Positions 23,121 to 64,000 of a stretch of 64,000 bases of DNA are shown here, piece after piece. The stretch's first letter is position 1; the number at the start of each line of letters is the position of its first letter. The notes beneath the pieces are model-generated. The model was given only the letters and a program-made list of their open reading frames with translations, was not told the DNA's origin and did not search any database. The stretch spans positions 29,140,001 to 29,204,000 of the forward strand of contig NW_027266273.1 in NCBI RefSeq assembly GCF_022045235.1. Reading direction: 5' to 3'. A program made the translations under genes and the position numbers. The DNA comes from Haliotis cracherodii (Eukaryota).

Positions 23121-23129
23121 CTGCCACAC

Positions 23130-41789: not shown

Positions 41790-44601
41790 CTTTTTGAGTT
41801 TAGACCTGGCTGTGATGGAGTGCTAGAGTCAACAGAGAGTTCAGACCAATCTGAAATAAGGCTGGTGTCAGGTTGGGGATTATCATCGAGCTCCTGATAT
41901 TCTGACTGTTGGATTGGCGGAGTGAGGAATACAAGGGGAATCTGTGGTGCACAAGGTACCGTATATCGCTGTGTATAAGGCGACCCCACGTATAAGACGA
42001 CCCCCCTGTACACGCCTTAAAAATCAACCCAAAATCCTATACTCCGTGTATAAGGCGACCTGGAAAGAAACACATCACAAGTCTGACTGATATACCGGTA
42101 GAAGATTTAACGTGCTCTTGCCGACTGATGCGTATTTTGCACACATCACAAGTGCACACCCAAACCTTATATATGCAATAAAAATATGTTTATCTTGCGT
42201 TGGTTTTTTTTCTAAAATGATAGGTCGAGTGTGTAACTCCGGCACACGTCGCCATTTTGTGTTTACACGGTACGACACCAAATTGGTGCCCGTAAAATAA
42301 AATTCATTTATGAAGTAATAACATATAAGAGACAATGGTGAGTAATTTAATCGCCAATTAACTATGTTGTAACTAACTAGGCTTATGTTTGCTTCACATT
42401 CAGCGTGTTTATTCCACAATCACTTGTCCACACCGTCTCCAACACTTGTTAATACAACTGTAAAAACAGCGGGAATTGATTTCAGCTTCACCGGTTATCA
42501 CATGTTAGGTCACATGTGCAATATGCAAATGATTACCGGTACTTCCGGCTCTCTACTCACGGATGTTGATTGTTTTACCGTGTCAGCTGGTTTGACAATC
42601 TGCATCGAGGAGAGGGTCATTTCAACTTTATTTGCAGAAATTATTAAACTTTATTCAAGGAAAAGAGATCCAAATCATGTTTATGTATGGAAATAGTTAT
42701 TTGAACAGTTATTTAGGACGAAATGCGAAGTTTTATTGTCAAATGCTGGGCTGGCTATCGGACGCCGGTTGACATCGCCAGTGGAAAAAAATGTGAGATC
42801 TTCGACTCCGTGTATAAGACGACCCCCCTTCTTAGCCCCCTCATTTTAGGTACGAAAAACTCGCCTTATACACAGCGATATATGGTAGTTGAGGAAGTGA
42901 GACAAGTTGATCATCGCTGTCCAAGTGTCTTTGCTGGCAATTTCATCCTTAGTTGTCTCGGTACAAAAGGGCACCTTGTAACATTCTGAGAGCTTCACTC
43001 TACCACTTGTGGTGTAGTTGGAAGCCATCCTTGGCAACTACCAGATAATGGTTTCCTGCGCATGTTTTGTTGCGATCATTGTGCAGGTACACAAAGTCAT
43101 CAATCTCAGTTTGGTCAGTAACACAGCAGTGACCTTGAGAAGCCTTGGATTTCTCCCTGGGAACATAGTTTGCTTTACGACTAGCAAGTTGATCCATGAT
43201 AAGCTGTTTGTCTGACATAGGCAACTGACAGTTAGTGAACTAACATCCCACGAGATGATAGACCCAGAGAGCAAATTTGTGAGTTTAAGTGAGTTACAGC
43301 AATGGTAAGGGCAGTCCAAGTGGTGGGGCCATGTACTTGGTCTTAACGCACCAACTCATCTCCAACTCTGGCATGGCCTTCTCAGCAACAGGGTTCTTGT
43401 TCTTGGTTTTCACTCTAAGTATTTCCAATGACAATCTGTGTTGTTGAGGAAGCTTATTCTTCTAGAGATTGATGAAACCTGGAGCATGGTCGGTACGGAT
43501 AACAACATAGAGGACCATCAAGATGTCGGAATTCAATATGTAGGCGGATCACGGCTTCACAAAGAGTGGAACCACGCTCATCCTCTTCAATGCAAGCTGT
43601 GTAGGATGTAACACATTCACGTAGGACAAGAATGAACTGTTGTTTGCGTCACATGACATATGACACAAAAGTGAAACAAATACTTTCAGAGGGGTCTACC
43701 AGGACATGTGGTGTCTTCCTCCGGGAGGCACATTGGTGGCAGGATTCTGTGATAGTTCTCAATTAACTTGTCCAAATCCAAAGCAAAGAAGTATCTGTGA
43801 CACACTTGTTGAGTCGATGAGCTGAAGCACTAGCTATCTGAATGTGCATGGTAGTAAGGAGTCCGTCTAATACCTGTCTCGGAACGACAATACACTCCCT
43901 TGTTTGGCGGAGTGGGTCTGTTCATCGGACCACAAGCAAGTCATCTTTAGAGATTGTTGTTGCATTTAAATATCTCTTGACATCTTTAACATTTGTGAGT
44001 TTCCTAGAGGGTCTGGTATCTTAAAGAAGGTGTATGTTGGTCTATCAAAGATCTTGGTACTCCTCCTGTAGAGACCGCCAAGCTGGTCTTCTTGTAAACA
44101 GAAGTCAACTGGTTCCATTCATGATGTCAGAAATGGTAATGTGTCTGACAACAGTCTTCTGTGCGCTCAATAAATGAGGAAATTTGTCAAGATAGGTTGT
44201 CATATTCTGGGGCATTTCGGCTTGCTAAGTCAGATGGTGCATTTACCGAACCTGAACTGTTGCCTGATTTTGACTGACTGTCGACAAGAAAGTAGAGACA
44301 CAGGGTCTAGCAGAAAATTCTTTTTGACATAACTTCGCAAATGCCAAAACACAAGGTCTGCTGTCAGTGAGGATACATGTTTTGAGTTTAGATTGTATGA
44401 TGAAAGGACTGAAGTGCTTGGTGGCGATAGTGATGGACAGTGCTTCTACCTCAAATGGTAGCCAGGTGACCTGAAATGTACAGGTTAGCACCAATTCCAT
44501 AGTTGATCCTCAGGGCAAGGAAGAACAGAGGAGAGTCCTGTCTGTGTCGTTTAAAAAGCCTCAAGTAAATGGTCGGTCCAGAATAGCTTTTGCTTTGATT
44601 G
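41790..44601 (-). mobile_element. Gypsy-like pol remnant, 3' part (RNase H, integrase, tail)
   Basis: [27 protein letters not shown]...LTDSRPC; IRTDHAPGF...KNKNPVAEKA; VYLHNDRNK. Continues at 58925. Confidence 0.85.
41959..42885. mobile_element. pogo/Tigger-type MITE, TA TSD
   Basis: TIR ccgtatatcgctgtgtataaggcga / tcgccttatacacagcgatatatgg, with internal gtataaggcgacc subrepeats. Confidence 0.92.
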
Positions 44602-44689
44602 CCCTTACGAAAAAAAAGGCCTGAAAAGATGCATCCCAGACCGCCTTAATCATTCCCCGCAAAGCACATTTTTACCTTCTCCGCAGGGT

Positions 44690-45505
44690 CTTCAGGAAGT
44701 CTCTAAATATTCCCAGCAAATGTCTCCATACCATCTCGGCAAACCACTCCCAACTTGCAGCTTGCCAAGAAGTATCAGAGACTTCCTTACAGTACCTACT
44801 GAAGTAGTCTCCGATACCGCCTCAGAACTAACCTTTTATGGCTAATTAAATATGCTTTGAAACATCCCGGCAAAACTACTAAGGAAGTCCCCAGTTATTC
44901 TCCACAAACTTGTGTTACATAATCAAAGATGTTTTTGAAGCATCCCTGCAACACTTGCAAGGAGGTCTCCGAAGCGTCTTCACAAATCTATCAGGGGTAA
45001 TTAAATGCTTTGAACCATCCCAGCAAACCTTCTTAGGAAGTCCCTGAATAGTCTCCACAAACTATTATTAGGTAATTAAAGATGTTTCTGAAGCATCCCT
45101 GCAACACTTGCAAGGAGGTCTCCGAAGCGTCTTCACAAATCTATCAGGGGTAATTAAATATGCTTTGAACCATCCCGGCAAACCTTCTTAGGAAGTCCCT
45201 GAATAGTCTCCACAAACTATTATTAGGTAATCAAAGATGTTTCTGAAGCATCCCAGCAACACTTGCAAGGAGGTCTCCGAAGCGTCTTCACAAACCTATC
45301 AGGAGTGATTAAATATGCTTTGAACAATCCCGGCAAACCTTTTTAGGAAGTCCCTGAATAGTCCCCACAAACTATTATTAGGTAATTAAAGATGTTTCTG
45401 AAGCATCCCCGCAACACTTGCAAGGAAGTCTCCAAAGCGTCTTCACTAACATGAGTAATTAAATATGCTTTGAACCATCCTGGCAAGCCTTCTTAGGAAG
45501 TCCCC
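44690..45505. repeat. Left subterminal array, about 154-bp unit, 4-5 copies
   Basis: gaagcatccc.gcaacacttgcaagga recurs near 44941, 45094, 45249 and 45404. Each unit consists of two related halves. Confidence 0.92.
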
Positions 45506-46027
45506 ATTACAAAGGTGTTTCAGTGACACTTTTCATCATTTTCAGTAATACATTGCTTATATCATAATCTAGTCTCTGAAACATCCTTGCCAAACATGTA
45601 CTGTCAAAAATGAGATAACAAAGATGCATGGTATTCTCTTTATTTGAAGTTCGCCGGATTGTTCTCACTTTGTGTGACGAAAGTGTTTTTCTTTCACCAA
45701 ATTGATTTTAGACTGACATTTGTAACTTTCACAGTGTTCATTACATAAGCAGCAGCTTCAACAACATAGGTGAGGTGTTTAGCTGGGTGATCCTGTTTCC
45801 TGCTTCAAAGGAGAGATGAGCTGGTCAGCATGGAATGATGTTGCATACCAGACAGTTTTCGGTGGTGGAAGTACCACCACCAACAGAGCACGAGCCACCA
45901 TTTACGGCAAGCATGGGTTTCTGAAGACTACCCCGGATCTTCAAGCAGACACTTCAAGGGGCTGAAATGGGATAAAATAGTACTATTAATCTGTGACAAA
46001 ATTATTATAAAAATTATAGGATGTCAA

Positions 46028-46147
46028 GAGTGAGTGAGTATGGTTTTACGCCGCTCTTAGCAATATTCCAGCAATATAACGGCAGGTGACACCACAAATG
46101 GGCTTCACATATTGTACCCATGTCGGGAATCGAACCCAGGTCTTAGG
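46028..46147 (-). mobile_element. 5'-truncated tRNA-SINE with (TCAC)n tail, in the last intron
   Basis: Minus strand has box B ggttcgattccc...gcggcgtaaaaccatactcactcactc. Confidence 0.85.
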
Positions 46148-47589
46148 ATGTTAAGAAGACGCATTAAAAACTATTTTTGCTACCAGATTACTGATGTAAC
46201 AAATGAAACACAATATAAACTTACCCTGGCTCATTCGCCTGAATGCATTTCTCAAGGTACAAATCTTCTTGCTAAGTGCATCAGAAAACTGATTGGGAAG
46301 CAACTTGAGCCTCTCAGTGGCAAAAACTGCAAAATAACAAATCATTTGATAAAATAAAATAATATAAAATGACATTGTTGTATTTAATATTTATAGTATA
46401 TATCCATTATCAGTGTATTTAAATTCTTTAATACCGCTTTCGGGGGGTATTTATTAATTTCCTCATGAAACTTGAGAATTTGAGTTGTTTAGATAATACT
46501 TACTCTCTAGAGCCTGCAATACAACGGCATGTTTTCTTTTAAACATTGCAGCAGTGCCTTGTCCAACGTCGGAGGGTTCAAAAAATCCATCCATGAAGCG
46601 CTTTAGTTTCCCACAATCCCCTACATTGCAAGACTTTGCCATCACATGTGCATACCATGTGATGGGAACGGCCAGGCTGGCACCTTGAGTCAGTAGTTGA
46701 TATCCTGATGGGAGCTTGTCATCTCCCCTGAGCTGTACCTGTTAACCCAAAAATTATGAGCAATTCAAATGACATGCAGTAGTGAAGTAAAAAACAACTG
46801 TATGCAAATTAAATTCAATTTCGGAAGCTGAAATGTCTATAAACAGCATATTCATTTACTTACATAATGGCATCTTGGCACCTGTACGCCTCGAAGGGGC
46901 TTGTACGTTGGCGGCTTCGTTGTGGTGTCTGCAAAATATTAAACAACAAAAAATTATTCTATGGGGTAGTGTTGTGATGTGAACAACTAGGATAACAAGG
47001 TGAAGATTTATTTTTTTGTGTTATTTGTATATTTTATTTATTTACCATTTTTTTTATTTTAACATTTCCATTTATTATACTGGTATTGCATATAATAAGA
47101 ATAGCAACTGATTTTTTTTTAAAGATGATTTTCAAGCATCTCTGTTTCAACATACCTGGCACATTTGTCTGAAGTTCACGAACTTCTTCTTCGGCCTTAA
47201 GGGCTCGGTCCCTCCAAAGGTTTAGTTCTGTTTGTAGCGTTTGTATCTGCACTTCTTTCAAAGGGCAGTCTTCACAGCTTCTTAGCAGAGCCGTAAATGC
47301 GCCAGGTTCTTGGGCAGTTAGTTGAGGGGTGGGGGACTGTTGCTATACATGCTTAAAAGGGTTGTAGGTTGTGATAGGCCATTGTTGTGCGCTGGGGTGT
47401 TGGGTCAGCAAGGCTGGGGAAGGCTGGGGTAGGCAAGGCTGGTTAGGAAATGCAAGGGGGGGGTTGTAAAGGCTGGGGAGAACTGTGGTAGTGGTTTGAA
47501 GGCTGAGGAGAGTGCAGTGACTGGGAAGGCTGGGAAGGTTGATGTGAGCGAGAAGGCAGAGATGAGTGAAGCAACTGGGAAGGCCAGGT

Positions 47590-47995
47590 GGAGTTACTTG
47601 ATGGGGAAGGCTGATGCGAGTTAGTGGACGGGGAAGGTTGATGCGAGTTACTTGATGGGGCAGGCTGATGTCAGTTAGTGGACGGGGAAGGTTGATGCGA
47701 GTTAGTGGACGGGGAAGGTTGATGCGAGTTAGTGGACGGGGAAGGTTGATGCGAGTTAGTGGACGGGGATGGTTGATGCGAGTTAGTGGACGGGGAAGGT
47801 TGATGCGAGTTAGTGGACGGGGAAGGTTGATGCGAGTTAGTGGACGGGGAAGGTTGATGCGAGTTAGTGGACGGGGAAGGTTGATGCGAGTTAGTGGACG
47901 GGGATGGTTGATGCGAGTTAGTGGATGGGGAAGGAGGCTGATGCGAGTTACTGGATGGGGAAGGAGGCTGATGTGAGTTACTGGATTGGGAAGGC
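47590..47995 (-). repeat. 27-bp coding minisatellite (SPSTNSHQP)n
   Basis: About 14 copies of gttgatgcgagttagtggacggggaag. Confidence 0.95.
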
Positions 47996-50017
47996 TGGAG
48001 TGCTCTGCTAGTGAACAAAGATTTTGCCCTCTGGTTAGCAAGTCTGGAGCGAAGTTCCTGCTGATTTTTCTTTGCCGCCTTCAGAACTGTTGAAAAAAGA
48101 ATACATGTTACACAGGATGACAAAATCAATGCTTCATAATTCATGATACAGTAAAAATAAATTGCAAACAAAGAGCATTAAAGGCATTCAGGTGAAATGG
48201 TTCAAGGTATAATGTTTTAATAGCTACAGAACAAACCACTTGTCTGTGACTTGGCTGATGCTAGCCTGGTCTTCTTGTTCCTCTTGGATGGAGATTCTGA
48301 AGGAAAACAACAACAAATAAAGCAGGTACCAAACTAGATTTAAATGTTATCAATTAGTTGAGATCTTGTGATTAGACAGTTAATAGTGATGTCCATGTTT
48401 GTTGACCAAAATCATTACACACTAAATGTGTTCTAGAGTAATGTAAGAAATGGTCATGCAATTTACAAGTACTCAGTGCTCAAACACTCAAGTTTGAATT
48501 ATTCCATAATGCAGAGATTGTAGACTACCTAACACAGGAAAGATTATGTATTTTGTAACACACCTCTATTCCTTACTATGATTCCGAGTATCATCATAAT
48601 TGAACATTACATTTTTTAAATTAACTCTTTACCTATGCGTGCAAGTTTCATAACTTATTTAGTAACAGTAACCTAAAATTAAATATACCCCCTGACACTT
48701 AAAAAAACAACTGACCTTGGAGTACCACACTGGTGATGGTGGCATCATAAAAACAACCAGTATCTGGCCACCAGGCAGCAACTGGCATCTTCTCCTTAAC
48801 CCCCTCCCACGTAACAGGCTCATCATCAGGAGTTGTAACTTCTCCCAAGTCTGTTATATATCTTTCCTTTTTATCTTCAAACTGCACCACTAGGAAGGGG
48901 GCTGAAAAGTCAAGTTGCATTCATTAATAACATAAAACTAAACTGTCAGGCAAAGTTGACAATAACTTTACAACAAATATTATTACAACCTGGTGCCAGC
49001 CCAAATCATAATTCTAGATGTCTGCCGTAATAGCCATGGTGCATGTCGACGGGGAAATCGGCATAAAGCAACGTAATTTTCATGAACCACAACATTTACA
49101 GGAACGATGGTAATATATTCATTTCCAACATATACATTACAGTAAAAGAATTGCCCTTACTTGAGAGTTCTTTAAAAAAAAATCTACCAACCTCCTCGTG
49201 AAAACAGCAGGTTCCAAAATGGCGGCGATACGGTACCATACAACTATTGACATTTGTGTGTAAAAAAGCAAACTATGTTTCATTTTATAAAAAAATAATT
49301 TAAAACAGAGTTTAAAATAAAACAAATATATATTGTTATCTAATAATTTAATAATTTCATAAACACAGACTACAGTATGTGATCATATTTCACATTTCAG
49401 TGACCAGGTACCTAATTTGTTTTGGGAAAATACTATATATCCCAATCCACCCTTCGCCGCCCCGTAAATCTTACGGAGAAGCACGATGTGATCGAAACGT
49501 GAAATCTGGAAGTCCGGCACAATATTACAAGCAATTACATCTATGCCTATTATTTTTTAGTGAATAATCACTGGCAGTCGTAAATTATATAAATAAAAGG
49601 TCCAACATTTAAAGTTATGATTTAAACTTCAGCCATATTTATTACATAAAAAAAACGTTTTTCCATTTCAGTTTTGAGGTTCCCAAATTAAGAACATAAA
49701 TATACGATTCATGAATGGACATTGAAAAGGATTTCTTTTTCAGGTCACGCTAAAATTTAGTTCAATATCTAAATGAGAATTGGTTTGGATGGGGGTCGTT
49801 TCTGTGGTATGTAGACAATGTAGGGGGCAATAATTTATAACATATATTTACGTTAACCAAATCTAACATATCTAGATCTTATATAAATCTAAAATGTACC
49901 TACCATTTGTTCGGGAACATACGTTGTCTTCCTTGCTGAACTCGGAGTCAGCGTACCTCGATGAAGGTTTGGTGACTCTCTTATTGCCACGGATTTCAGC
50001 CATCTTAGAGGGTGACG

Positions 50018-50228
50018 TACGTTTGTGGCAAAAGTATTCTTTTCAACTCAAGAGCGGACAGATCTCACAAATTTGATGAAAGCGATAAATTGGACAATGT
50101 ACTGACGGAAGCGGACAAACTGATTACGTTTGTGGCAAAATTCTTTTTAGCGTAAAAGCAGACAGATCTCACAAATTGGATGAAAGCGATAGATTGGGCA
50201 GTATTGACGGATGCGAACAGACTGATAA
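50018..50228. repeat. About 105-bp tandem duplication in the intergenic region
   Basis: tacgtttgtggcaaaa...gacagatctcacaaatt.gatgaaagcgata...actgat occurs twice. Confidence 0.85.
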
Positions 50229-50774
50229 CATTTGACGGAAAAAGGCAAACTATTTATATGCAAGTGCTTGTGAAAGGCAAATCTATTAGGTATGATCGGA
50301 GTCAAAACACATTGGTAATATAATTGACATGAGAGGGGCTGACAATTGTTTTGTTGAAACTGACCAGCCTGTGCCCACGCGGAAGTTGGCTTCAGTCCAC
50401 TATATTGTCAACTTCGTATATATACTTATGTAAACATGGCTGTGCGTCTCACACTTGTGACCAGCTTTTCAAATGGTACTGACATCACACACACCTAAAA
50501 CAAAAGACTTGTCACAGGAAGTCGTTTGACAACGCACTGTACATATCTTAATCTGCTTATGCTGTGTTGTGACAAGTTGGCCGAACTTTTACGAGTAGGC
50601 TTTCGGTTCCAAAAACTGCCTAATGTGATGACACGCATGATGAATGGACGGCTTTGAAAATTGCTAAATGAGTTAGAATGTACTGATATTTTAATCTGCA
50701 TTCAAAGAAGAATGAGAGGAACCAATCAAAGGTATCCGCACCCGAGTCATTATAAAGATAGATCGAACGTGCAA

Positions 50775-53311
50775 AACGTGCCCGACTAGAACAAGATATT
50801 AAGACAGGACAACTAAATAAACAATATACCACAGGCATCTTCTTAAACTTCTCTAAAGCTTTCGACATGGTATGGCACGATGGGCTAATACAAAAACTTA
50901 AAAAAATAGGACTCAAAGGTCAGATAATAAACTACATCCAGGACTTCTTAAACAATCGTAAAATAACCGTGGGTATAGACCAAACTCTATCGGACCAATG
51001 TCCCCTAGAAAATGGCACTCCACAAGGGGAGTATCCTCAGCCCCACCCTCTTCAATATAATGATAAACGATCTATTCGAGGGTCTATCCCCTAAAGTAAA
51101 CACATCAAAATTCGCGGATGATGGAGCCATCTGGATCCGCACTAAAAGCATGAAAATGGCCAAAAATCTACTCCAAAAATCTCTTAATAAAATACAACAA
51201 TGGGCTGACAAATGGGGCTTCTCCCTTAACTCAGAAAAAACAACAGGAATAGTATTCAAACATAAAAACATGAAACCCGCCTCCCCAATCCTCCAGCTAA
51301 ACAATCAAACAATCAAATTTCAAAAACAAACCAAATTCTTTGGACTTATTTTCGATGAACATCTCACCTGGGATGCTCACATCCAAAACCTAACAACTAA
51401 ATGCAGTAAAGACCTAAACACCCTAAGATGCCTAACTGGCTCTAACTGGGGAGCCTCCAAAGATACTCTCCTCTCTCTCTACATATCCCTAATTAGATCA
51501 AAACTAGACTACGGCTGCGCCATATACAACACCCTAAACAACTCTCTATCTAAAAAACTTGACTCAATACAATATCAGGCTCTCAAACTCATTACACGCA
51601 CCCAACATGGCACCTCCTACGCCTCACTTCAGGCCTTAACAGGAGAAATGCCACTAAGTCTACGCAGGGAACAGCTAAGCTTAAATTTCTGGGCCGCGTC
51701 CCAATCAAACCCTCTCATCCAAAACTTAATAAACCAAAACATCAGCCCTAAAAACCAAGCTCTAGCTCGTAAACACCCCTTACTTACCCCAATATCCCAA
51801 AGAATAACAAACTACCTAAATGAACACCAAATTAAAAATCTTAAACAAAACTGCAAACAATCAAATATCTTCACCCCTAAACTTAAAATACCCAAAATAG
51901 ACACAACACTAGCTAGCCAAATAAATAAACAAACCGACCCAAACATAGCTAAAACTACCACACTAGCATACATACACAAAAATTGGCCAAATTGGTGTCA
52001 CATTTACACGGACGGATCCTCAGATCCGACCTCCAAACACACGGGTTTCGGAGTCCATGCCACACAACCAACTAAAACCACACAATCCTTCCGACTAGCT
52101 AGCCAAATAAATAAACAAACCGACCCAAACATAGCTAAAACTACCACACTAGCATACATACACAAAAATTGGCCAAATTGGTGTCACATTTACACGGACG
52201 GATCCTCAGATCCGACCTCCAAACACACGGGTTTCGGAGTCCATGCCACACAACCAACTAAAACCACACAATCCTTCCGACTCCCAAATAACCAATCAAT
52301 ATTCACGGCAGAACTAATGGGCATGGCCTCAGCCCTCCACAATCAAGAATCAAAAAACCACCAAAAAATCCTAATACTTACTGACTCCCTAAGTGGACTA
52401 CAAGCCCTCCAAAACAAAAATACCAAAAACCGACCTAAATTAATAAATCAAATACTTAAAAGCTCCAACGACCTAACAAAAGCAGGCAAACAAATAACCT
52501 TCTTGTGGATACCCGCCCATGTAGGAATATACGGTAATGAAAACGCCGATAAAGCAGCTAAACTATCCCTCAAAATCCCAGAAATAAGCTTAAACTTACC
52601 CATCTCAAAATCAGAAATTAAAAGTGTAAACAAACAAAAAATCACAAAAAAATGGCATAACCTATATCTAAACTCAAATAGCCAAATCAAAAGAGTGCTC
52701 AGCAAACCACTAACCAAACCAAAAATTCTCCATCCATCAAAAAAAATCACTAATCACTAAACTCCAAACAGGACACACCAACCTAAATAACCACCAAAAA
52801 AAATTTAAAAAACACACTACAGGTAACTGCCCACGCTGCAAACAACCAGAAACCCCAGAACACGCACTCATCCACTGCACACACTACCTAACACATCGAA
52901 CCGCATTACAAACCACCCTCAATCTAAACAAGGCTCTCACTCTAGAAGCAATACTAAACCCACAAAATAAACTAGAAAACTTCAAGGCCTTAGGCGTATT
53001 CTTAATAAAAACGCAACTAATAAAACGCATCTAAAACCATAATAACCTACCAAATCAAAATCACATAAACAAACAATCATCCACCATACCCAGCTCCCTT
53101 AGTTCTCCTCCCCAACCCCATCGGCATCTATTCCAAATCTCAAAATTCCCAAATTCTATATAAGCAACCCCTAAAGCCCCCTCTTGGGTTGCACAGACCA
53201 CCCTCGCCCCTTTCGGAAACACATTAAATGGCCTGGCCGGGCCCGTGTGCGAAATACGCATCAGTCGGAAAGCGCACGTTAAATCTCCAAAGTAAGTAAG
53301 TAAGTAAGTAA
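50775..53311 (+). mobile_element. 5'-truncated I-superfamily (I/Nimb-like) LINE: RT, RNase H, CCHC finger, (AAGT)n tail
   Basis: FLNFSKAFDMVWH, GTPQG/SILSPTLFNIMIND, FADD, YTDGS...FTAEL...TDSLS...WIPAHVGIYGNENADKAAK, CPRCKQPETPEHALIHC. Possible short TSD GCAA. Confidence 0.93.
51908..52279 (+). repeat. Perfect 186-bp in-frame tandem duplication in the LINE RNase H
   Basis: LASQINKQ...YTDGS...QSFR (62 aa) appears twice. Confidence 0.97.
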
Positions 53312-53453
53312 GCAATTCGAAGACATTAAACCGTCACCGAGTACAAAGAGGATCCAATCGAAGGAACATATTCCGCACCCGAATCATTATAAAAGATAGA
53401 TCGAACCTACAACTCGAAGACATTTAACCTTCACCCAGTACAAAGCTTTGAAC

Positions 53454-56400
53454 ATGGCGGATGGAGGTAAGTTTTCTCGTGGAGCCGTTTTTTGTTTGAC
53501 TTACTCAATTTTTATTATTAAAAATGTAGAATTCTCAACGAACACAAAATTCATATATTATGATTACATATGGAAATCGGAATCCAAACATTTCCTCCAA
53601 ATATAATGCCATTTGTACAGGCATCTACATTCGTACACTTTTGTTTTCTAAAGTTTTATAAGATCGAATAACCACTCGTTAGTAATTCGTTTCCGTTTCG
53701 TTTCGTTTTTCAAAACCTTCTGTTTCAAACATTCGCAAGATGGTGATTGCGACTCAGTAAAAAGATGTAGATCTATACACAAATCCGAAAGACGTGATAA
53801 CAATCACGTATCTAATTGATGAATTCAAATGGTAGTGAGCAACAGTTTAAGTGCTGACATGTATGTAGAAATGGACGGATATATTTAAGATCATGATTTG
53901 TTCGTTATTCAGATCATCAAGAAGACAGCATTGGGAGACTGCGGCCAAGAAAGTACAGGAAAATTGTCAAAGACAAGTAAGTAACTTTAAACTGTCGGGA
54001 AAGGGCCGAATATATGTACACATATGTCAATTCTATTATTGCTAAGCGTCAACTAACTTAGCTTCGATCTGTCGAGTGACACAAAGTTGCATCGCCTTTT
54101 CAGGCCTAGTTTACTTCCACAATAATGTAATGCATGTGGTTATTGCATAGGTCGTAAATCATATGTTTTTCCTCGCCTTGACCGCCAAGAGCTGTAATGA
54201 GCTCTTCTCGTCTGTGTGTACTGTCGTTAACAATTTAATGGTCTGGTTGTTTTATTACCTATTTCCTGCATTTTTGCGTGTCTATGAACATCATCAACAA
54301 ACAAAAGAATAAATAACATGTGAACATGGACCTTGATTCATTTCCATAAATGATATGTTATTTAGCATATTTAAACATTATTTTTAACCTGCTTTGAATT
54401 TGATTTATTTATTGCGAGCTTTTTCACATTAATGGTATGTTATCGGAAATGAAAATGTGCATATTGTATTTTTAGTGTCCCTGAAGGTCATTTTGGACAC
54501 AGAGAGGATGACAAAAGGAGCTCAAAGAAAAGGTATTTTGTCCTTGACTGACTTATGAAATATATTTTCCATGTAGGTCTAAGTATTTTGATTTATTTAA
54601 AATTAAAATATCGGGAGTCATTCCAGAAATAATGCAACATGTGCCCATTGACAAACATTTTAAACATTATATTATACCAACACATAATCATTGCTCATAG
54701 AAAAAATGCCACAGTCATAGCCTTATAGCACTAAAAGCCCGTTTTGAATAATTACCACTATAATGTAATCATGGCTTGTATATCTAACATGTTATATACA
54801 ATTTCTTTTCAGGATTGAGCCCACAAAGAAAAGCATTGTTGATGTTGTTGATGCTCCTTGCACAAGTGCTGCAGAAGGTGAAGATACACTAAAATTTTAA
54901 GGGATATTATTGCCTTACATAATCCATAAATGCATAAATGGCACTTTGCATAATTCAGATCCATAGTTAAATAGACTTCAACTGACTTATCTCATTGTCA
55001 AAAAGTATATGGATGGTTCATGCATGGTGAAATAAATTATTCAGCATATTATTCAGCAAATTACCAGCATTTTCTCTTGTATGATTTATGATTGTGTATT
55101 TGTTTGTACATTATCATGTGCCATTGATTGTTTCAGGACTCACAATCAGTGACCTGTTGACTGATTATGTCCAGCAACAACAGAGGGAAGAGGAACCTGC
55201 CAAGAAAGATGAAGGGAATGGCACCCAGGCTGAGCCCAAGTCAGAAATGGACCAGCCCATATATGATGGACATTGGATGTCCATAGGCTTAAGCATCATG
55301 CTGATATCATTGTTTGCTATGTGTCACTCTGTTACCAGTGCCATGTTGGCCGATTTACTGGTATTGATACGTTTGCACTGTATGTCACAACCTAAAGCCC
55401 TGCAGAGTGTGTATATGCTGAGAAAGACATTTGCTTCTTTCGAATCTCCCCTGCAGAGATTCTATTATTGTAACAACTGTCATTCACCTGTGTCAAAAGA
55501 AAGAAATTTGCCCAAACACTTTTTGTTCAAAGTCCCTCTTAGCCTCTAGTTCTAAGAGTTTTTTCCTTGTGTTCCCACTTTACCATCAGCTGCGTTCCTT
55601 TTTCAAAAACCAAACTTTTGTATCTGGTCTGGGCCACCGATTCCACCGGCAGAAGAAAAATGCAAGAAACTATGAGGACATATATGACTCAAACTTATAT
55701 CAACAATTTGTTGTCAATGATGGACCACTATCAGAAAAGCATCAATACAACATATCATTTACTTTCAACACTGATGGGGTTCCGTTGTTTAAAAGCTCGC
55801 AAATGTCCATGTGGCCAGTATATTTGATGGTTAATGAACTCCCATTCAAACAAAGGAAGTCCAAAACTAATATGCTTATGTATGGGATATGGTTTGGGTC
55901 AACAAAGCCATGTATGAGTACATTTTGTGAACCCCTTCAGGCATCTTTGTCAGACCTTGAAACAAATGGTGTGCAGGTTGAAGTAAATGGTGAATCTGTT
56001 ATTTGCCATTGTTTTCTTATTGCTTTGACTGCTGATTTACCTGCAAAAAGTTCTGTTTTAAATATGGTTCAGTTCAATGGATCTCACAGTTGTCTTTTTT
56101 GCACACAAAAAGGTAAAAACTTCCGAACTGATAAAGGTGGCAATGTTCACATATTCCCTTATGTTGAAGAGGACCCTAGTGGTCCAGCCCGTACCGCCAC
56201 TGATTCAGTTAGAAATTCACTAACTGCTAGCTCTGTACAACCAGTTGAAGGTTACTCCTTTCTTATGAATCTGGCCAGCTTTGATTATGTTCGATCATGC
56301 AGTGTAGACTACATGCATTGTGTTCTTTTAGGCGTAACTAAATTGCTCCTTACTTTATGGTTTTCTTCAGCACATGCTGCCTCAAGGTTTTCTTTATTGC

Positions 56401-57527
56401 CATATGTTAATTCTGTTGACAATTTGCTTTGTTCTGTAAAACCACCATCCAACATATCAAGGCTGCCTAGATCCATAAATGAACATTTAAAATACTGGAA
56501 AGCTGCTGAATTTAGATCATGGCTTCTATTTTACTCAATTCCAATTCTGCAAGGTTTGTTGCCTTATGTGTATTTTTATCATTACACTTGTTTTGTTGAA
56601 GCTATCACCTTACTTTCAATGGACAGTATTTCTGAAGCAGATGTGAAAAATGGACAGGTTTTGTTAGACTATTTTGTCTACATGTTTGCAGATTTGTATG
56701 GAGAGAGATACTTAACACTTAATGTTCACTCTCTTTTGCACTTGCTCTCAACTGTACAGAACCTTGGTCCTCTCTGGGTACATTCTTGTTTCCCATTCGA
56801 AAATCTTAATGGCAATCTTATGTCTATATTTCATGGGACACAACATGTTGACTTACAAATTATGAATGCTTTTAACATGATGCAACTGATGCCTTTAATG
56901 CTATCCTCTGTAAAGAAAGATTCTCCAGCCTATGAATTCCTAACAAAACTCTGCAAGAATTCCCAACACTACTTGCAAGGGTAGTTGACCAAGTCTTGTA
57001 AATTTATTGGTAAGGGCTTCAAGAAGAAGCTCTGTAGTGTCCATAATGTTGCATTGATAGATTTCTTAGGAGCTGAACCTAAAGACTTCATGGTCTTCAA
57101 GCAGCTTAAGTTGAGAGGAAAAACCTTTCATTCCAAAGAGTATGTTAGATCATTGAAAAGAAATTCATCAGCAGTTATGTTCAGAGAAAAAGAAAACAAA
57201 AGAAGGGGTGTTGTCAACTGGTTTTGTTTCACCCAAGATGTCAATTGTATATGTGAAAAAACCCAATGTGATGACAGTTGTAAGATGCTGGCCTGCATCA
57301 CTCCGTACGATGTGGATGCAGGATCCATATTTTCTTCATATGAGGATGAAGTTGACAACTTTCTTGGTGTTGAGCCATCCCATGTAAAATTAGTTAAGGC
57401 ACAGACTGAACACATGGGGGTAGTAATCGTACCAGTTAAGAACTTAATATCCTTATTGATCCCAGTTGTTATTGATGACACCCTTTTCTTTTGTGAACAA
57501 CCCAACAACATAGAAGGTGACTTGTAA
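53454..57527 (+). pseudogene. EnSpm/CACTA transposase, 5 exons (near-intact)
   Basis: Exons 53454-66, 53913-76, 54476-532, 54813-77 and 55137-57527 splice in frame. Motifs FNTDGVPLFKSS..WP, TADLPAK, DYMH, WKAAE, NVHSLLHL, GPLWVHSCFPFE. One frameshift at about 55500 and a stop at 56982-84. Confidence 0.9.
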
Positions 57528-58289
57528 TGTTATTGAACTAAGGACATAATGAAATAACTTGAAATTGGCTCATCTGGGACATTTGTTGAAAATATTAAAT
57601 TCATTCAAATACATGAATAGTGAATCAAGATGTTAATTTATTGCATTTATGTAAATAACCTCAAATCAATATATTGGTAAATGCATGCATAAGAAACAAA
57701 TACTGTATAAACAGTTTTTTTCAACAATGAATGGATAGTCACTTTTAATCACTCCCTCATTCTGTTGAGAAAAGAACTTTCTTACACATCTTTTGTGTTC
57801 ATATTTCACATTCCCCCGTGCAGGTGTCAGGATAAATATCCAGCAGGTTTTATAGAGAAACCCTCTGACATCTTAAAATTCCTGTGTTGGCTATTCTTAT
57901 ATACCTTTTTTCTGATGAGACTGTTATATGGCACACAAACACTGTTACTTTCTGATTGAAATTTATGAATATATTGTACATTCTTTTCATTTTCCAGAAT
58001 ATTGTATACTCAAATTCCTGCATTTGTTTTTACTGTATTTAATAAAAATATACCTAGAAGAATTAATTGTGTTGAGTATTTCATTATTTATGTCTTTGTT
58101 GACATACATAGGATTTTCTAATTCATTGCATGTGAATTTATAAGATCAATAGTTTTAAAGAAAATTCAAAGTAAATAATAAAGATCATGTCATCAAGGTG
58201 CTAGGTCTTGACTGAAGCTCAGTCTATTGAATGGTATCAAAGGGTGTCTTTGAAAGGCATATACTTACAAAAGTCTTCATTTGGTTTTG

Positions 58290-58900
58290 GAAAGTGAGGA
58301 TGCATTGCAAACCATTTTTCAAGTTGCCTAGTGATGAAGTAGTCTCCAAACAATTGTTTCGAAGATCTCCACTAGCAAACTAGGAAACTCCACTGTATCT
58401 TTTCAATTTTGTATGTAAAGAAGTCGCCGATACATCCTCGCAAACAGTCAACTATTTTCTTGCCTTGTGAAGAAGTCTCTGAATAGTATTCACAAAGTCT
58501 TTGTGTGGTCTTTGCTAGCGAGGATGCACTTGATACATCCTTGCAAACCTTCAGCTACTTTATTGCCATTCTGAGGAAGTCTCCGAATAGTCTTTGCAAA
58601 TTGTTTTGAAGGTCTTCGCTAGCGGAGACGTATCTGAGACATCTTAGCTTTTTTGCTGGTCTGTGGAGAAGTCTCCGAAACATCTTTAGAGATCTCCCCA
58701 GACATCCACTGCTAGTGGAGATGCATTAGAAGCGTCTTCGGTGACATTAGTATATAATTGCCCTTTTGGGGAAGTACTTGATTATTCCCCAGAATAGTCT
58801 TTGATGGGTCTCCACCAAGTCTCGGCTAGCCAAGACCATAAAAATTGGCTAAAATCCCACAAAAGATGCATCGGGACGGTCTCGGGTGGTCTCGGATACA
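58290..58900. repeat. Right subterminal repeat region
   Basis: Recurrent gaagtctccga, gatacatc and gaggatgca motifs related to the left array. Confidence 0.75.
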
Positions 58901-58924
58901 TCTTTTCTGGGGTTTTTTGATGGG

Positions 58925-59520
58925 TGGTGGCCATCAGCTGTATCATCAAGTGGGGTGAGAAGCGCAGAACATCCAGGTTTGACGTGTGACAGGACATTGT
59001 AGGGTCCAATGAATGATTGTAACCAATCAACTGTTTTTGGAGGTGGACAAGAAGCCAGTGTAGAAATGCTTCATGGGCTCGCTTGAATGGAACCCTGGAG
59101 CCAGTGCCAACCCAAGATGTTTGTTGTTGTGGGGGGAGATGATCGTCTTCTCAGGCGTCAGTCTGATATTGTCTGAGTATCAGCTCCACAGTAAAGGTCA
59201 TCAGCAAGCTTGGCAACAACCCCTTCCTCCAGTAGATCCCCTAGCACGCAGTACATAAGCTCCACCAAAGTGGTCTCTGATCCCGGGATTCCAATGGCTG
59301 ATTTAGCATACACCCTAACTCCCCGGCATAGAGTCACCAGGCCGCAGTACTTCATTGATTCCTGTGGATATAATGTACCGATATTTGGCAATTTGTCGTA
59401 GTGTGGTGACATCTGGCATGAGCGCATGCTGTGGCCTACCATCTGCAAACATCAGAGAATGCAGTCACTAATCTGTAACCGGCACTTGACTTCTTTACCA
59501 AAGAGGATGGATTGAGAGGT
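58925..59520 (-). mobile_element. Gypsy-like RT remnant (5' continuation of 41790-44601)
   Basis: [27 protein letters not shown]...[12 protein letters not shown]. Confidence 0.88.
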
Positions 59521-60929: not shown

Positions 60930-62935
60930 AACCATTTCATGCATATAGAGGAACTCCATTGAATATAGTTGGCAAGATAACAGCGGATGTGCAACATCAT
61001 AATCAGTAAGCCAGTTTACCTTTGCTTGTGGCCGATTACGACAGTGATGCTCCTCCACAGCTCAGATGATCGTGGCTGAAGATTGGCCGAGCATATTGTC
61101 AAAGGGGCAGTACAAGATCAACTCATGTGCAGATTCAGTTCAAGATATTGTGAAGAGGTACCCTGATGTCTGTAAGGAAGAATTGGTACAGTGCAAGGGA
61201 CAAAGGCAATCTTACACCTAAAGGAAGAGACGGTAGCAGTGTTTCTCAAGGCAAGACCTGTTTGTTTTGCATTGCGCCCTGCAGTTGATCGAGAGCTTGA
61301 GCGGATGCACAAGGAAGGCATAATTACGCCTGTTAAGATTAGCGAGTGGGCAACGCCATTTGTTTGTGTTCCGAAGGCCGATGGTCTTTGTGGGGACTAT
61401 AAAAGCACTGTGAATCCCACAATACACAGGATTCCAATTCCGACAGGAATTGTATGGAAGTTTTGCAGGTGGAAAGAAGTTCACTAAGATTGACTAAAGG
61501 TGTGCCTACAAACAAATGCTGTTGGATGAGGAGTTACAAAAGGTGGTAACCATCAACACACAGAAAGTACTTTCAGATACACTCGACTCCCATTTGGGAT
61601 CTCGTCTTGTCCGGCAATCTGGCAGAGATTTATTGCGCAAGTGATAGGACTTGATCGGGTATGTGCAATAATGGATGACATACTGATATCAGGAAGAGAT
61701 GATAATGAACATCTCATGAACATTGAGAAAGTACTTAACAGTATTACAGTTATATCACGGCTTGTCAGCTTAAAGTGGGAAAGCCCAAAGTGATGTGGGT
61801 CTCAGAGGTTTACCACTTCGGTGAAACCCACGAGCACGGGTATGGTGCTGACAAACCTAGAAACATAATTGAGGGGAACCGGGATTCAAATCCACAATCA
61901 TAGGTTTCCGGCGTGCCCAAGGAACGCAACTCTGCACAGCGAATTGCCCCCCTGAAAATATCTGAAGATGGAATTCAACCTACAAAGGACAAGGTGGAGG
62001 CCATCAAGAAGGCACCCGTTCCACAAAATGTTAAGGAACTCCAATCTTGGTTGGGGATGCTGAATTTCCAGGGAAAGTTCATTCCAAGTCACTCAACAAT
62101 CACTCATCCATTGTTGAAGCCTGACTTCAACAGAACAGAGCTGTATGTTGAACAGGACTGTATTCTTTTAGGACTAAGAGTCGCTATCCTATTGAAGTTT
62201 CAGAAAGAGATGCTGAATGAACTCCAACTGGCTCATCCTGGAATGGTCAGGATGAAGAAAGTAGTGGCTGAACACTGACAAGGATATCCAGGCAGTTGTA
62301 GGCAGTGTAGACATTGTCAACAAGTCAGAAACGTGCCATCAGTGGCTCCACTGATGCCTTGGGTGTGGCCGACTATACCATTGGCCAGAGTTCATATTGA
62401 TTTTGCTAACAAGGACAATCAGGACTACTTGGTGGTAGTAGATTCCTATTCAAAGTGGCCAGAAGTTGGGTTTATGAGAAACACAACTGCAGAGGCAACA
62501 ATCAACGTGCTCAGAGATTTGTTCAGCAAATATGGCATACCCCATCAAATTGTGAGTGATTACGGAACACAATTCTGAAGGGAGGAATTTGAAACATGTA
62601 TCAACATGAACAGGATGAAACCAGTGAGAGTAGCTCCAAAACATGCAGCCAGTAATGTCGCAGTAGAACGAGTGGTACAGACTTTCAAGAACAGTCTTAA
62701 AGCTAGCATGACAAGTTCACAGTCATTACAGCAGTGTATTGCCAGTTTTCTTCTCACCTGTCGCTCTACTCCTCATGCGACAACAGGTAGAACACCAGCA
62801 AGTTTGTTCTTTGGGCGAGAGATCTGCACTAGAGTTAGAGGGGAAGGTTCTAAATAAGCAGAGTGACATGAAACTGTATTATGATAACAGAATGGGTCTC
62901 CGTGAGTTTCTTCCAGGTGACCAAGTTATTATTAT
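60930..62935 (+). mobile_element. Gypsy (K02A2.6-like) pol remnant
   Basis: KARPVCFAL...SEWATP..CGDYK; RLPFGIS; MDDILI; HPGMVRMK; RVHIDFA...VDSYSKWPE...SDYGTQF...ERVVQTFK. Confidence 0.9.
61750..61951 (-). mobile_element. Probable tRNA-headed SINE inserted in the Gypsy RT
   Basis: Minus strand starts ggggggcaattcgctg...ggatttgaatcccggttcccc (box-B-like) and interrupts the pol sequence. Confidence 0.5.
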
Positions 62936-63431: not shown

Positions 63432-64000
63432 GTTATCTATCCATTGACTGCCACAAGAATCTATGATAAGGTCGATCACCTGGTGATATACTGATCTGAA
63501 GAAACATTTCAACTATGTCACAGATAAATGCCACTGGATGTCTTCTGAAGCGGAGCAAGACATCAAACAACTCACTTTGCAACTTTGGTCCTGCATGTAT
63601 TGCATCATTTAAAGATAGGCCATCGTGTTTAGCTGATGCATCAAACACAATACGAACCTTTGTGGTACTCCTATCAGGACGCAAAATGGGAAAGTGAGGA
63701 AGATACCATCTTGTTTCACTAAATGACTCATCTTGTGGAACTTTGTGAATGTATCCTTATGACAAGTACTCAGAGTTAATATCATCATAAGCCTTGGCTA
63801 TTTCTGGATGTTTAGTCAACTTTTTCTCAGTACTGTTAAGACATTTAACAGTTTTATGATAGTTGTCAGTCAGTGAATGAACATTTTCATTCCAAGGAAT
63901 ACCTATTTCATATCGGTCATCCTTATGAGTGAGTGTTTCATGAGCATACTTTAAAACCATTTCATCATCAGTCTTAATTTGTGATGTTGGGTTTCCTTGA
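63432..64000 (-). mobile_element. BEL/Pao RT fragment
   Basis: RYEIGIPW; [27 protein letters not shown]...CDIVEMFLQI...HRFLW. Confidence 0.93.

What the first reader, a model, noticed from the sequence alone, without database searches (positions are those of the whole stretch)
44602..58924. Complete two-gene EnSpm/CACTA transposon with divergent spliced transposase and accessory gene
Seen: CCC/GGG termini, a 2-bp TG TSD whose removal restores the flanking Gypsy frame (DGH|QSK), subterminal arrays, a 5-exon transposase (+) and a multi-exon gene (-) arranged head to head. YY1-like ATGGCGG motifs lie near both 5' ends (about 49216 and 53452). Known: plant CACTA elements use a transposase plus a TnpA DNA-binding protein that binds subterminal repeats. 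Inference: this is an animal two-component equivalent with an unrelated accessory protein. Few lesions suggest intact siblings exist. The ORF track shows it only as fragments.
Basis: partly seen in the sequence, partly recalled or inferred. Interest (0 to 1): 0.8.

Follow-up and report, generated by a model that had tools for sequence, protein, structure and literature searches.

The report
Two-gene abalone transposon with BEN partner
This is an old, structurally whole cut-and-paste transposon in an abalone genome that carries, beside its transposase, a second transcribed gene for a likely DNA-binding (Tudor-like plus BEN) protein, an arrangement shared by relatives in other marine animals.

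Summary
Window 44602-58924 is a 14,323-bp DNA transposon with imperfect CCC...GGG inverted ends, a 2-bp TG duplication, subterminal repeat arrays and two head-to-head genes. It sits precisely inside a retroelement pol. The transposase (+) passes Pfam Transposase_21 and DUF1258 and has the CMC motifs. CCC ends plus 2-bp duplications match the animal "TRC" branch of the CACTA superfamily (DeMarco 2006), not plant CACTA proper.

The minus-strand gene is real. Six of its seven introns are seen as GT-AG joints in contigs of four public runs. It matches a 512-aa Haliotis rufescens protein and shows purifying selection (pN/pS 0.20). It encodes a Tudor-like barrel, a Ser/Pro repeat, a coiled coil and a C-terminal BEN-fold domain.

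Related transposase loci from metagenomes carry the same opposite-strand Tudor-like exon in 22 of 36 with enough upstream DNA. Eight also show BEN-like pieces, and their ends read CCCGTACGAAAA-like.

This copy is dead: both genes carry stops and frameshifts, and a young LINE splits the intergenic region. About 25 or more 6.2-kb non-autonomous relatives are 92.6-99.2% alike (most 97-99%).

That the BEN protein binds the subterminal repeats, as TnpA does, is inferred and not shown.

The parts
44600..44601 (.). target-site duplication TG (left)
44602..44645 (+). 5' terminal inverted repeat, begins CCCTTACG
44602..45575 (+). 5' subterminal repeat region, including the 155-bp tandem array at 44843-45504. 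It holds 10 of the window's 18 GAAGTCTCCGAA-like 12-mers.
45628..45961 (-). accessory gene, last exon. The stop codon is at 45954-45956. Contigs reach down to 45628.
46027..46143 (.). SINE-like short repeat inside the last intron. It is also present in the 6.2-kb family but absent from the C16 copy.
46225..46326 (-). accessory gene exon (second half of the BEN-like domain)
46504..46738 (-). accessory gene exon (first half of the BEN-like domain)
46864..46928 (-). accessory gene exon
47156..48086 (-). accessory gene large exon. It encodes a basic stretch, a 27-nt (9-aa Ser/Pro-rich) tandem array at 47591-47997 and a coiled coil. Here it is broken by stops at 47671-47673 and 47343-47345 and by a frameshift near 47456.
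48237..48296 (-). accessory gene exon (basic, NLS-like)
48716..48901 (-). accessory gene exon encoding the Tudor-like barrel
49161..49239 (-). accessory gene first coding exon (ATG at 49239). It is supported by the H. rufescens model P0132 only. The laid contigs leave this intron in.
50780..53313 (+). nested, 5'-truncated non-LTR retrotransposon (RT plus RNase H, GTAA-repeat tail), 97-100% identical to most of the genomic matches listed
53454..53466 (+). transposase putative exon 1 (ATG at 53454)
53913..53976 (+). transposase putative exon 2
54476..54532 (+). transposase putative exon 3
54813..54877 (+). transposase putative exon 4
55137..57527 (+). transposase main exon (Transposase_21/DUF1258; DDE, C(2)C and H(3)H motifs). 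Here it has a frameshift near 55500, a 3-codon gap near 56250 and a stop at 56982-56984.
58300..58924 (+). 3' subterminal repeats and the 3' terminal inverted repeat, ending ...GATGGG
58925..58926 (.). target-site duplication TG (right)

Best explanation
Window 44602-58924 is one copy of an animal 'TRC'-type member of the CACTA/CMC superfamily of cut-and-paste DNA transposons. It has CCC...GGG ends and a 2-bp target duplication. It inserted into the pol gene of an LTR-type retroelement in an abalone (Haliotis-like) genome.

It carries two divergently transcribed, spliced genes.
- A DDE transposase lies on the + strand.
- An eight-exon gene lies on the - strand. Its product has an N-terminal Tudor-like barrel, a basic stretch, a Ser/Pro-rich repeat, a coiled coil and a C-terminal BEN-fold domain.

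Shown here: the ends and the duplication; the exon structure and transcription of the accessory gene; purifying selection on it; its two folds; and the same gene order in related elements of other organisms.

Inferred (about 0.4-0.5): the BEN domain recognises the short motifs repeated in the two subterminal arrays and the coiled coil pairs the protein. The accessory protein would then gather or mark the ends for the transposase, as TnpA does for maize En/Spm. The Tudor-like module would tie this to chromatin.

This particular copy is inactive. Both genes have stops and frameshifts, and a young LINE has landed between the two promoters.
For: - Ends and TSD: (17 of 19 copies with both termini recognised have identical 2-bp flanks).
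- Precise insertion: the flanks abut at residues 925|926 of a related pol ORF.
- Transposase: Pfam Transposase_21 scores 37.6 bits (cut-off 28.6) and DUF1258 scores 58.3 bits (cut-off 33.1). It is 98% identical to H. rufescens LOC124115320 and 36-57% identical to the other 119 proteins listed (201 found in all), those with a source's name being from molluscs, echinoderms, cnidarians, amphioxus and a wasp. NTDG, TADLPA, C(2)C, H(3)H and FPFE are present.
- Family traits: CCC ends plus 2-bp TSD define TRC elements (passages of PMC1636069 and PMC4298943).
- Accessory gene: 6 of 7 introns appear as GT-AG joints in contigs of 4 runs, and the contigs listed for X1 and the spliced ones for X3 have 0 mismatches. 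It matches XP_048245672.1 (512 aa) exon for exon.
- Selection: pN/pS is 0.20 in frame against 1.01 and 1.35 in shifted frames, window vs the C16 copy.
- BEN fold: Atlas feature score 0.93 to BEN clusters and TM 0.71-0.72 to BEND7 and NAC1. In the AF2 model, 10-residue block means for 391-510 are 89-98 pLDDT. The Foldseek top 9 are all BEN structures. VIA-align gives Z 9.2, 8.9, 8.9, 6.1 and 5.9 for NACC1, Bsg25A, BANP, BEND3 and BEND6, with the next unrelated chain at 5.5.
- Tudor fold: mean pLDDT is 87.7. Z is 8.3, 8.3 and 7.9 to the RBBP1, ARID4B and JMJD2C Tudor domains, with the next chain at 5.9.
- Conservation of the architecture: among 80 metagenome loci with a related transposase, 26 have the Tudor-like exon. 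All 26 are on the opposite strand, 0.5-2.3 kb upstream. That is 22 of the 36 loci with at least 2.5 kb upstream. Eight have BEN-like pieces, all on the opposite strand and upstream, and one passes Pfam BEN (28 bits, cut-off 23.2). Their 3' ends read ...TTTTCGTACGGG, the complement of CCCGTACGAAAA, which resembles the abalone CCCTTACGAAAA.
- Repeated motif at both ends.
Against: - No binding, excision or expression-level data exist, so the end-binding role is an analogy.
- Pfam does not call BEN on the abalone protein. A profile of the family found no PDB sequence.
- The Tudor hit by sequence is below Pfam's cut-off (20.7 against 23.8 bits).
- The 12-mers lie on the same strand at both ends rather than inverted. 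A simple symmetric end-binding model does not predict this.
- The transposase's four upstream exons are not confirmed by reads.
- Only 8 of 80 relatives showed a BEN-like piece, and 14 of the 36 loci with at least 2.5 kb upstream lack the Tudor-like exon. These are mostly the more distant ones.
- One abalone copy (C67) joins the 5' repeats directly to the transposase without the accessory gene.
- The runs are labelled 'RNA?' by guess. That they hold RNA rests on the spliced joints and on the absence of any second 100% copy of the exon in the assembly.
Confidence: 0.8

Rival explanations
1. The accessory protein is not an end-binding cofactor. It is instead a regulator or tether. It might be a repressor of the element's own bidirectional promoter. 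It might be an anti-silencing factor. Or it might be a chromatin reader that steers integration through the Tudor-like module, with BEN binding host or promoter DNA.
For: Tudor domains of the matched kind (ARID4A/B, JMJD2C) belong to chromatin proteins. BEN proteins such as NACC1, BANP and Bsg25A are solved bound to their own target DNA as transcription factors. According to the passage read in PMC1636069, maize TnpA itself both represses and reactivates the promoter. The 12-mers are in direct rather than inverted orientation.
Against: Nothing here separates this from end binding, and the two are not exclusive. No motif shared between the intergenic region and the subterminal arrays was sought.
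Confidence: 0.3
2. The minus-strand gene is a host gene fragment picked up by one transposon lineage (transduplication) and plays no part in transposition.
For: Captured host exons are common in large DNA transposons (general knowledge). NCBI names the H. rufescens products as cellular proteins, 'MAGE-like 2' and 'DAN4-like'.
Against: Searches of the whole genome with the two exons found them only inside copies of this element family. The BEN exon gave 6 matches and the Tudor exon 31 matches, and no separate host paralogue appeared. The same gene in the same orientation accompanies related transposases in 26 metagenome loci of about ten distinct sequence types by my own sorting's output, no clustering run. 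It is under purifying selection.
Confidence: 0.05
3. The pair of genes is a domesticated, no longer mobile locus kept by the host. The TIR-bounded structure would be a relic.
For: Both reading frames are open in H. rufescens and 96-98% identical to the window. The accessory gene is transcribed.
Against: In this genome both genes are broken, as are those of the other 4 transposase-bearing loci. The genes occur in several copies between transposon ends. Non-autonomous relatives that are mostly 97-99% alike point to recent mobility.
Confidence: 0.05

Closest known systems
TRC elements (SmTRC1 of Schistosoma mansoni and relatives in Aedes, Tribolium, Hydra 'Spongebob'), CACTA superfamily; DeMarco et al. 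2006 (PMC1636069), Zhang et al. 2015 (PMC4298943); passages read
   Same: It is an animal host element. The TIRs begin with CCC, the target duplication is 2 bp, the transposase has a Transposase_21 domain, there are internal tandem repeats, the transcripts are spliced, and size variants and truncated derivatives exist.
   Different: SmTRC1's extra products (PrA, PrB) come from alternative splicing on the same strand. Its authors reported them as having no detectable relatives in other TRC elements. Here the second protein comes from a separate, opposite-strand gene. It has recognisable Tudor-like and BEN folds and is shared by relatives from other organisms.
Maize En/Spm (CACTA) with TnpD transposase and TnpA
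   Same: Both are two-protein systems within one superfamily. Both have long subterminal arrays of short repeated motifs. In both, non-autonomous derivatives keep the ends. The transposases share DDE with C(2)C and H(3-4)H motifs.
   Different: En/Spm has CACTA ends (passage of PMC1636069) and, as I recall, 3-bp duplications. It has one transcription unit with alternative splicing. TnpA shows no similarity to the Tudor/BEN protein found here. That TnpA binds 12-bp subterminal motifs is recalled, not read here.
Mirage and Chapaev (the other CMC branches)
   Same: They share the CMC-type transposase. The best Pfam hit here is DUF1258, a family built on nematode proteins. Its link to Mirage, and Mirage's 2-bp TSD, are recalled and not tested here.
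   Different: Chapaev has CAC..GTG ends and 3-4-bp duplications (passage in PMC4079192). No reference Mirage sequence was available for a tree.
BEN-domain DNA-binding proteins (Insensitive, Bsg25A/Elba, BANP, NACC1, BEND3/6)
   Same: The fold of the C-terminal ~110 residues matches (Z 5.9-9.2). A small all-helical domain follows two short strands. It sits at the C-terminus after a coiled coil.
   Different: Sequence identity is only 5-13%. Pfam does not call BEN on the abalone protein. The gene is transposon-borne, and the domain is fused to a Tudor-like barrel.

Membership tests
CMC (CACTA-Mirage-Chapaev) transposase superfamily | [quoted passage not shown] | tested here: met
   NTDG at 55767, TADLPA at 56028, CLFC at 56091, HSLLH at 56727 and FPFEN at 56790. 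The same columns are invariant in 13 aligned homologues.
CMC (CACTA-Mirage-Chapaev) transposase superfamily | Pfam Transposase_21 (tnp2) above the curated cut-off | tested here: met
   37.6 bits against a cut-off of 28.6, E 1.7e-9
EnSpm/CACTA proper (plant type) | TIRs beginning CACTA | tested here: not met
   The ends read CCCTTAC in the window and in 20 related copies.
EnSpm/CACTA proper (plant type) | 3-bp target-site duplication (recalled) | tested here: not met
   2-bp duplications in 17 of 19 copies
EnSpm/CACTA proper (plant type) | TnpA-type second protein made by alternative splicing of one transcription unit | tested here: not met
   The second protein comes from a separate opposite-strand gene. 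Its folds are Tudor-like and BEN-like.
TRC elements (animal CACTA-superfamily branch) | CCC as the first three bases of the TIR | tested here: met
   The definition comes from passages of PMC1636069.
TRC elements (animal CACTA-superfamily branch) | 2-bp direct repeat flanking the TIRs | tested here: met
TRC elements (animal CACTA-superfamily branch) | transposase groups with SmTRC1 in a tree | not tested
   No SmTRC1 sequence was obtained from a tool, so no tree was built.
Chapaev | CAC..GTG termini and a 3-4-bp TSD (passage of PMC4079192) | tested here: not met
   CCC..GGG termini and a 2-bp TSD
Mirage | 2-bp TSD and a Mirage-type transposase (recalled) | tested here: inconclusive
   The 2-bp TSD is met. 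DUF1258 scores 58.3 bits against a cut-off of 33.1, but its equivalence with Mirage is recalled only, and no reference sequence was compared.
BEN domain (PF10523) | Pfam model above the gathering score | tested here: not met
   There was no hit for the window exons or for the H. rufescens proteins P0121 and the family members P0126-P0131. One relative, L102:2110-2475(-), does pass with 28.0 bits against 23.2.
BEN domain (PF10523) | BEN fold | tested here: met
   VIA-align gives Z 9.2 (103 residues aligned), 8.9, 8.9, 6.1 and 5.9 to five BEN structures, which take the top five of 48,161 chains. The Foldseek top 9 are BEN structures. Atlas supports this as well.
Tudor (hybrid/interdigitated type) | Pfam Tudor-family model above the cut-off | tested here: not met
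   SGF29_Tudor scores 20.7 bits against 23.8.
Tudor (hybrid/interdigitated type) | Tudor barrel fold | tested here: met
   Model pLDDT is 87.7. Z is 8.3, 8.3 and 7.9 to RBBP1, ARID4B and JMJD2C Tudor domains, with rmsd 1.3-2.2 over 51-56 residues, and the next chain scores 5.9. An aromatic cage was not examined.

The most novel reading that the evidence does not exclude
A whole clade of animal CACTA-superfamily (TRC-type) transposons, from abalone to the cnidarian- or other invertebrate-derived contigs in marine metagenomes, depends on a conserved, divergently transcribed Tudor-coiled-coil-BEN protein. This protein would read the subterminal repeat arrays. It would be an independently evolved counterpart of plant TnpA. 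It would also make such transposons a plausible reservoir from which animal BEN-domain chromatin proteins were drawn.
Probability: 0.35. Interest if true: 0.78.

Novelty: new variant of a known kind. Interest (0 to 1): 0.62.

Why it matters
Animal CACTA-superfamily elements are usually described as single-transposase elements. The only second products I found reported (SmTRC1 PrA/PrB, passages read in PMC1636069) had no relatives elsewhere.

Here a second gene with two recognisable folds is conserved beside the transposase across several organisms. That gives a directly testable idea of how these elements recognise their long subterminal arrays. It also links the BEN domain, a sequence-specific DNA binder of animal chromatin regulators, to a mobile element.

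In the paper library I found no link between BEN and CACTA, EnSpm, Mirage or Chapaev.
- 'BEN domain' + 'CACTA' gave 2 papers. In PMC5704228, which I read, the two terms were unconnected. The other (PMC8880037) I judged unrelated from its title and abstract start alone.
- 'BEN domain' + 'DNA transposon' gave 6 papers, 4 of them listed. I read passages of PMC5704228 and PMC11601247 and found no link. The other two I judged from their titles.
- 'BEN domain' + 'Tudor' + 'transposable element' gave 2 papers, unrelated by title.

Repbase reports and subscription journals are not covered, and supplements were closed.

There is a practical point as well. The H. rufescens genes named 'MAGE-like protein 2' and 'cell wall protein DAN4-like' are transposon genes. 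The 6.2-kb family, whose copies are mostly 97-99% alike, points to recent transposition in abalone.

Tried and rejected
My first guess for the accessory gene's start was an ATG at 50003. I dropped it when the H. rufescens protein P0132 showed that the first coding exon begins at 49239.

My first coordinates for three transposase exon borders were off by one. I corrected them.

A motif of putative transposase exon 2 (G-R-[LVI]-R-P..Y) was found in only 1 of 120 homologues, so homology does not support the upstream exons. The conservation pattern does support them.

The paralogous empty-site test by DNA failed. The left flank matches other retroelement copies only over 44304-44473 at 66-83% identity, and the right flank matches nothing else. 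I used a protein ruler instead.

The profile of the BEN-like family found no PDB sequence. Pfam gave nothing for 9 of the 10 upstream pieces of relatives.

A search for long inverted repeats in three long metagenome loci did not reveal their ends. Comparing copies gave the 3' ends only, so no TSD could be read in the relatives.

The 1.5-kb middle of the 6.2-kb family matches neither the window element nor any transposase, and its origin is unknown.

The phmmer hits P0122-P0125 are long repeat proteins with 6-8 partial matches each. I judged them spurious by reading their sequences.

Rejected readings:
- That the LINE pieces in the C1 locus are the same insertion as in the window. Identity there is 88.5-96.6%, whereas other LINE copies in the genome are up to 100% identical to the window's.
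- That the spliced contigs come from a genomic retrocopy. The only 100% match of the BEN exon in the assembly is the window itself.

Full report
WHAT IS THERE

The window is G000:C10:29140001-29204000 of a 1.18-Gb genome. The nearest database proteins are from Haliotis rufescens, at 98% identity for the transposase and 96% for an accessory exon. The host is therefore an abalone or a close relative. I did not establish the species.

At 44602 the sequence begins CCCTTACGAAAAAAAAGGCC. At 58924 it ends ...GGGGTTTTTTGATGGG. The outermost inverted pair is 34 nt long and 82% complementary. TG flanks both ends.

THE ENDS ARE REAL

The first 249 bases match 41 places in the genome and the last 245 bases match 32. 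In more than 20 cases the two ends lie 5.4-7.2 kb apart in the right orientation.

I fetched 20 such copies. They are 92.6-99.2% identical to L001, most of them 97-99%. They begin and end CCCTTAC(A)n. The 2-bp flanks are identical in 17 of 19 elements with both termini recognised, the window included. The misses are L001 and L012, and L012's 3' end is degenerate. In 2 of the 21 examined one terminus is unrecognisable.

CCC ends with a 2-bp duplication are the published marks of 'TRC' elements, the animal branch of the CACTA superfamily. I read passages of DeMarco et al. 2006 (PMC1636069) and Zhang et al. 2015 (PMC4298943).

THE INSERTION SITE

The flanks are a decayed pol on the minus strand. 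A related copy elsewhere (L034) has one open frame of 1,628 aa with protease, RVT_1 and RT_RNaseH_2 domains.

Using it as a ruler, the right flank aligns up to residue 925 (the tblastn alignment runs on 13 nt into the element, to residue 930, which I take as spurious) and the left flank aligns from residue 926. The domain order fits a Ty3/Gypsy-type element, but I did not classify it further.

THE TRANSPOSASE

The 517-aa open frame at 55431-56984 passes Pfam DUF1258 and Transposase_21. It has 201 relatives at E <= 1e-5. Homologues align collinearly from 55142 to 57524. The DDE residues and the C(2)C and H(3)H motifs are in place (definition from a passage of PMC12730594).

Against the H. rufescens protein P0001, the window copy has three lesions:
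- a frame change near 55500;
- a 3-codon gap near 56250;
- a stop at 56982-56984.

They have GT..AG introns and compatible phases. In copies C1b and C45, exons 2 and 3 are 93-95% identical without gaps. The neighbouring introns are about 79-82% identical, with many gaps or little cover. This supports the exons, but no reads were laid there. I searched the exons one by one and left the joined model out.

THE ACCESSORY GENE

A phmmer search with one exon (46505-46738, minus strand) found a 448-aa protein at 96% identity. Its cluster mate is XP_048245672.1, a 512-aa H. rufescens protein.

That protein maps onto eight minus-strand exons: 49239-49161, 48901-48716, 48296-48237, 48086-47156, 46928-46864, 46738-46504, 46326-46225 and 45961 onward, with the stop at 45954-45956. 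All seven introns are GT..AG.

I laid contigs of four runs from two coded organisms on 45600-50100. They show six of the seven introns as joints with CT..AC ends on the + strand, four of them in all four runs (46326/46504 in X2 and X4 only; 48296/48716 in X1, X3 and X4). The contigs listed for X1, and the spliced ones for X3, carry no mismatch to the window. Intron 1 is left in by the contigs that reach it.

The runs are RNA only by the tool's guess. The spliced form cannot come from the assembly's DNA, because the only 100% match of the exon in the genome is the window itself.

The window copy has stops at 47671-47673 and 47343-47345 and a one-base frame change near 47456. Contigs of X2 and X4 do not have the second stop, and X4 lacks the extra base.

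Between the window and the C16 copy, over 561 gap-free coding bases, pS is 0.270 and pN is 0.055, a ratio of 0.20. Differences by codon position are 16/9/33. The two shifted frames give ratios of 1.01 and 1.35.

WHAT THE ACCESSORY PROTEIN LOOKS LIKE

Pfam gives only a sub-threshold SGF29_Tudor hit.

C-terminal domain:
- An AlphaFold2 model of P0132 with 22 further sequences (P0121 and family members) gives 10-residue block means of 89-98 pLDDT for residues 391-510, plus two long helices.
- The Foldseek top nine are all BEN-DNA structures.
- An exhaustive VIA-align search puts five BEN domains first: NACC1 at Z 9.2, Bsg25A at 8.9, BANP at 8.9, BEND3 at 6.1 and BEND6 at 5.9. The next chain scores 5.5.
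- The ESM Atlas points the same way.

N-terminal domain:
- The Tudor-like exon, modelled with 20 aligned sequences (19 relatives from metagenome loci and the C16 copy), has pLDDT 87.7.
- It matches the RBBP1, ARID4B and JMJD2C Tudor domains at Z 8.3, 8.3 and 7.9. The next chain scores 5.9.

My tests agree with it.

THE GENE BELONGS TO THE ELEMENT

Genome-wide, the two exons occur only inside copies of this family. The region is syntenic in copies C1a, C1mid, C16, C80 and C45. It is also present, at 76-79% identity and with stops, in the 6.2-kb family.

Those 6.2-kb copies lack the transposase, so they are non-autonomous.

One copy, C67, lacks the accessory region.

Only four other loci hold this transposase, and all four have stops.

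BEYOND ABALONE

A scan of metagenome contigs returned 80 loci with related transposases.

A local profile found the Tudor-like first exon in 26 of them. It is always on the opposite strand, 0.5-2.3 kb upstream of the transposase match. That is 22 of the 36 loci with at least 2.5 kb upstream. The 14 without it are mostly the most distant relatives.

BEN-like pieces were found in 8 loci, all opposite-strand and further upstream. One of them passes Pfam BEN.

Many loci are copies of a few families. By my own sorting's output (no clustering run) I count about ten distinct sequence types.

Comparison of copies shows that two of these families end ...TTTTCGTACGGG. This is the complement of CCCGTACGAAAA, close to the abalone CCCTTACGAAAA.

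NESTED AND NEIGHBOURING FEATURES

Window 50780-53313 is a 5'-truncated LINE with RT, RNase H and a GTAA-repeat tail. It is 97-100% identical to most of the matches listed, out of 3,383 first-look candidates of which 40 were scored. It is therefore much younger than its host element, which differs by 8-12% from its nearest relatives. It lies between the two gene starts.

HOW IT LIKELY WORKS

Shown: a DDE transposase of the CMC kind, ends with long arrays of a repeated 12-mer, and a co-inherited nuclear-type protein with a dimerising helix and a DNA-binding fold.

Inferred: the BEN domain reads the subterminal motifs and helps the transposase find or pair the ends. This would be the role that TnpA has in maize. 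The Tudor-like module would add a chromatin link.

The direct orientation of the motifs, and the lack of any binding data, keep this at roughly even odds. A regulatory or tethering role is the main rival.

VERDICT

The family label should be TRC-type CACTA/CMC. The copy is dead. The real interest lies in the conserved Tudor-BEN partner gene.

Noticed in passing
window 23094-24382 (-): A relic of a different, distant CMC-type transposase, 20-27% identical to the same homologues. It was also hit in the own-genome search at C10:29163100-29163441.
   Followed up: no
L001-L020 (for example G000:C78:16461640-16467921): About 25 or more 6.2-kb non-autonomous relatives are 92.6-99.2% identical to L001, most of them 97-99%. 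They have clean 2-bp TSDs, yet no open transposase of this family was found in the assembly. What moved them so recently is unexplained. Their 1.5-kb middle part matches nothing I compared.
   Followed up: partly
window 46027-46143: A ~118-bp SINE-like repeat with very high contig depth in all four runs. It is present twice in tandem in the 6.2-kb copies and at several places in the C45 and C1 loci, but absent from the C16 copy.
   Followed up: no
window 51908-52282: The nested LINE carries a perfect 186-bp tandem duplication inside its RNase H region. Other genomic copies of the LINE lack it (their matches overlap by about 188 bp).
   Followed up: partly
L029 about 4219-6312 (G000:C16:7976918-7979011): In the C16 copy, the 27-nt coding repeat of the accessory gene has grown to about 2.1 kb. 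It is 0.4 kb in the window.
   Followed up: no
G000:C1:38563000-38605400 (L023, L024, L027, L028, L031): A cluster of at least three partial copies of the element in both orientations. LINE pieces and an inverted segment are present, so the locus looks rearranged.
   Followed up: partly
window 45628-47641, run X2: A spliced 1,200-nt contig of 'organism A' is about 98% identical to the window copy and lacks one of its stops. No copy closer than 93% was found in the assembly for the DNA stretches searched there (both ends and the transposase). It may be an allele or an unassembled or polymorphic copy.
   Followed up: no
window 61191-62857 (+) and 63433-63684 (-): Further retroelement pol fragments (RT, integrase-like open frames) lie on both strands to the right of the insertion. 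The region is a nest of retroelements.
   Followed up: no
window 53313-53444 and 50700-50770: A unit of about 96 bp just upstream of the transposase start is repeated. A similar stretch lies immediately before the LINE. The LINE seems to have landed inside a short tandem repeat of the intergenic region.
   Followed up: no
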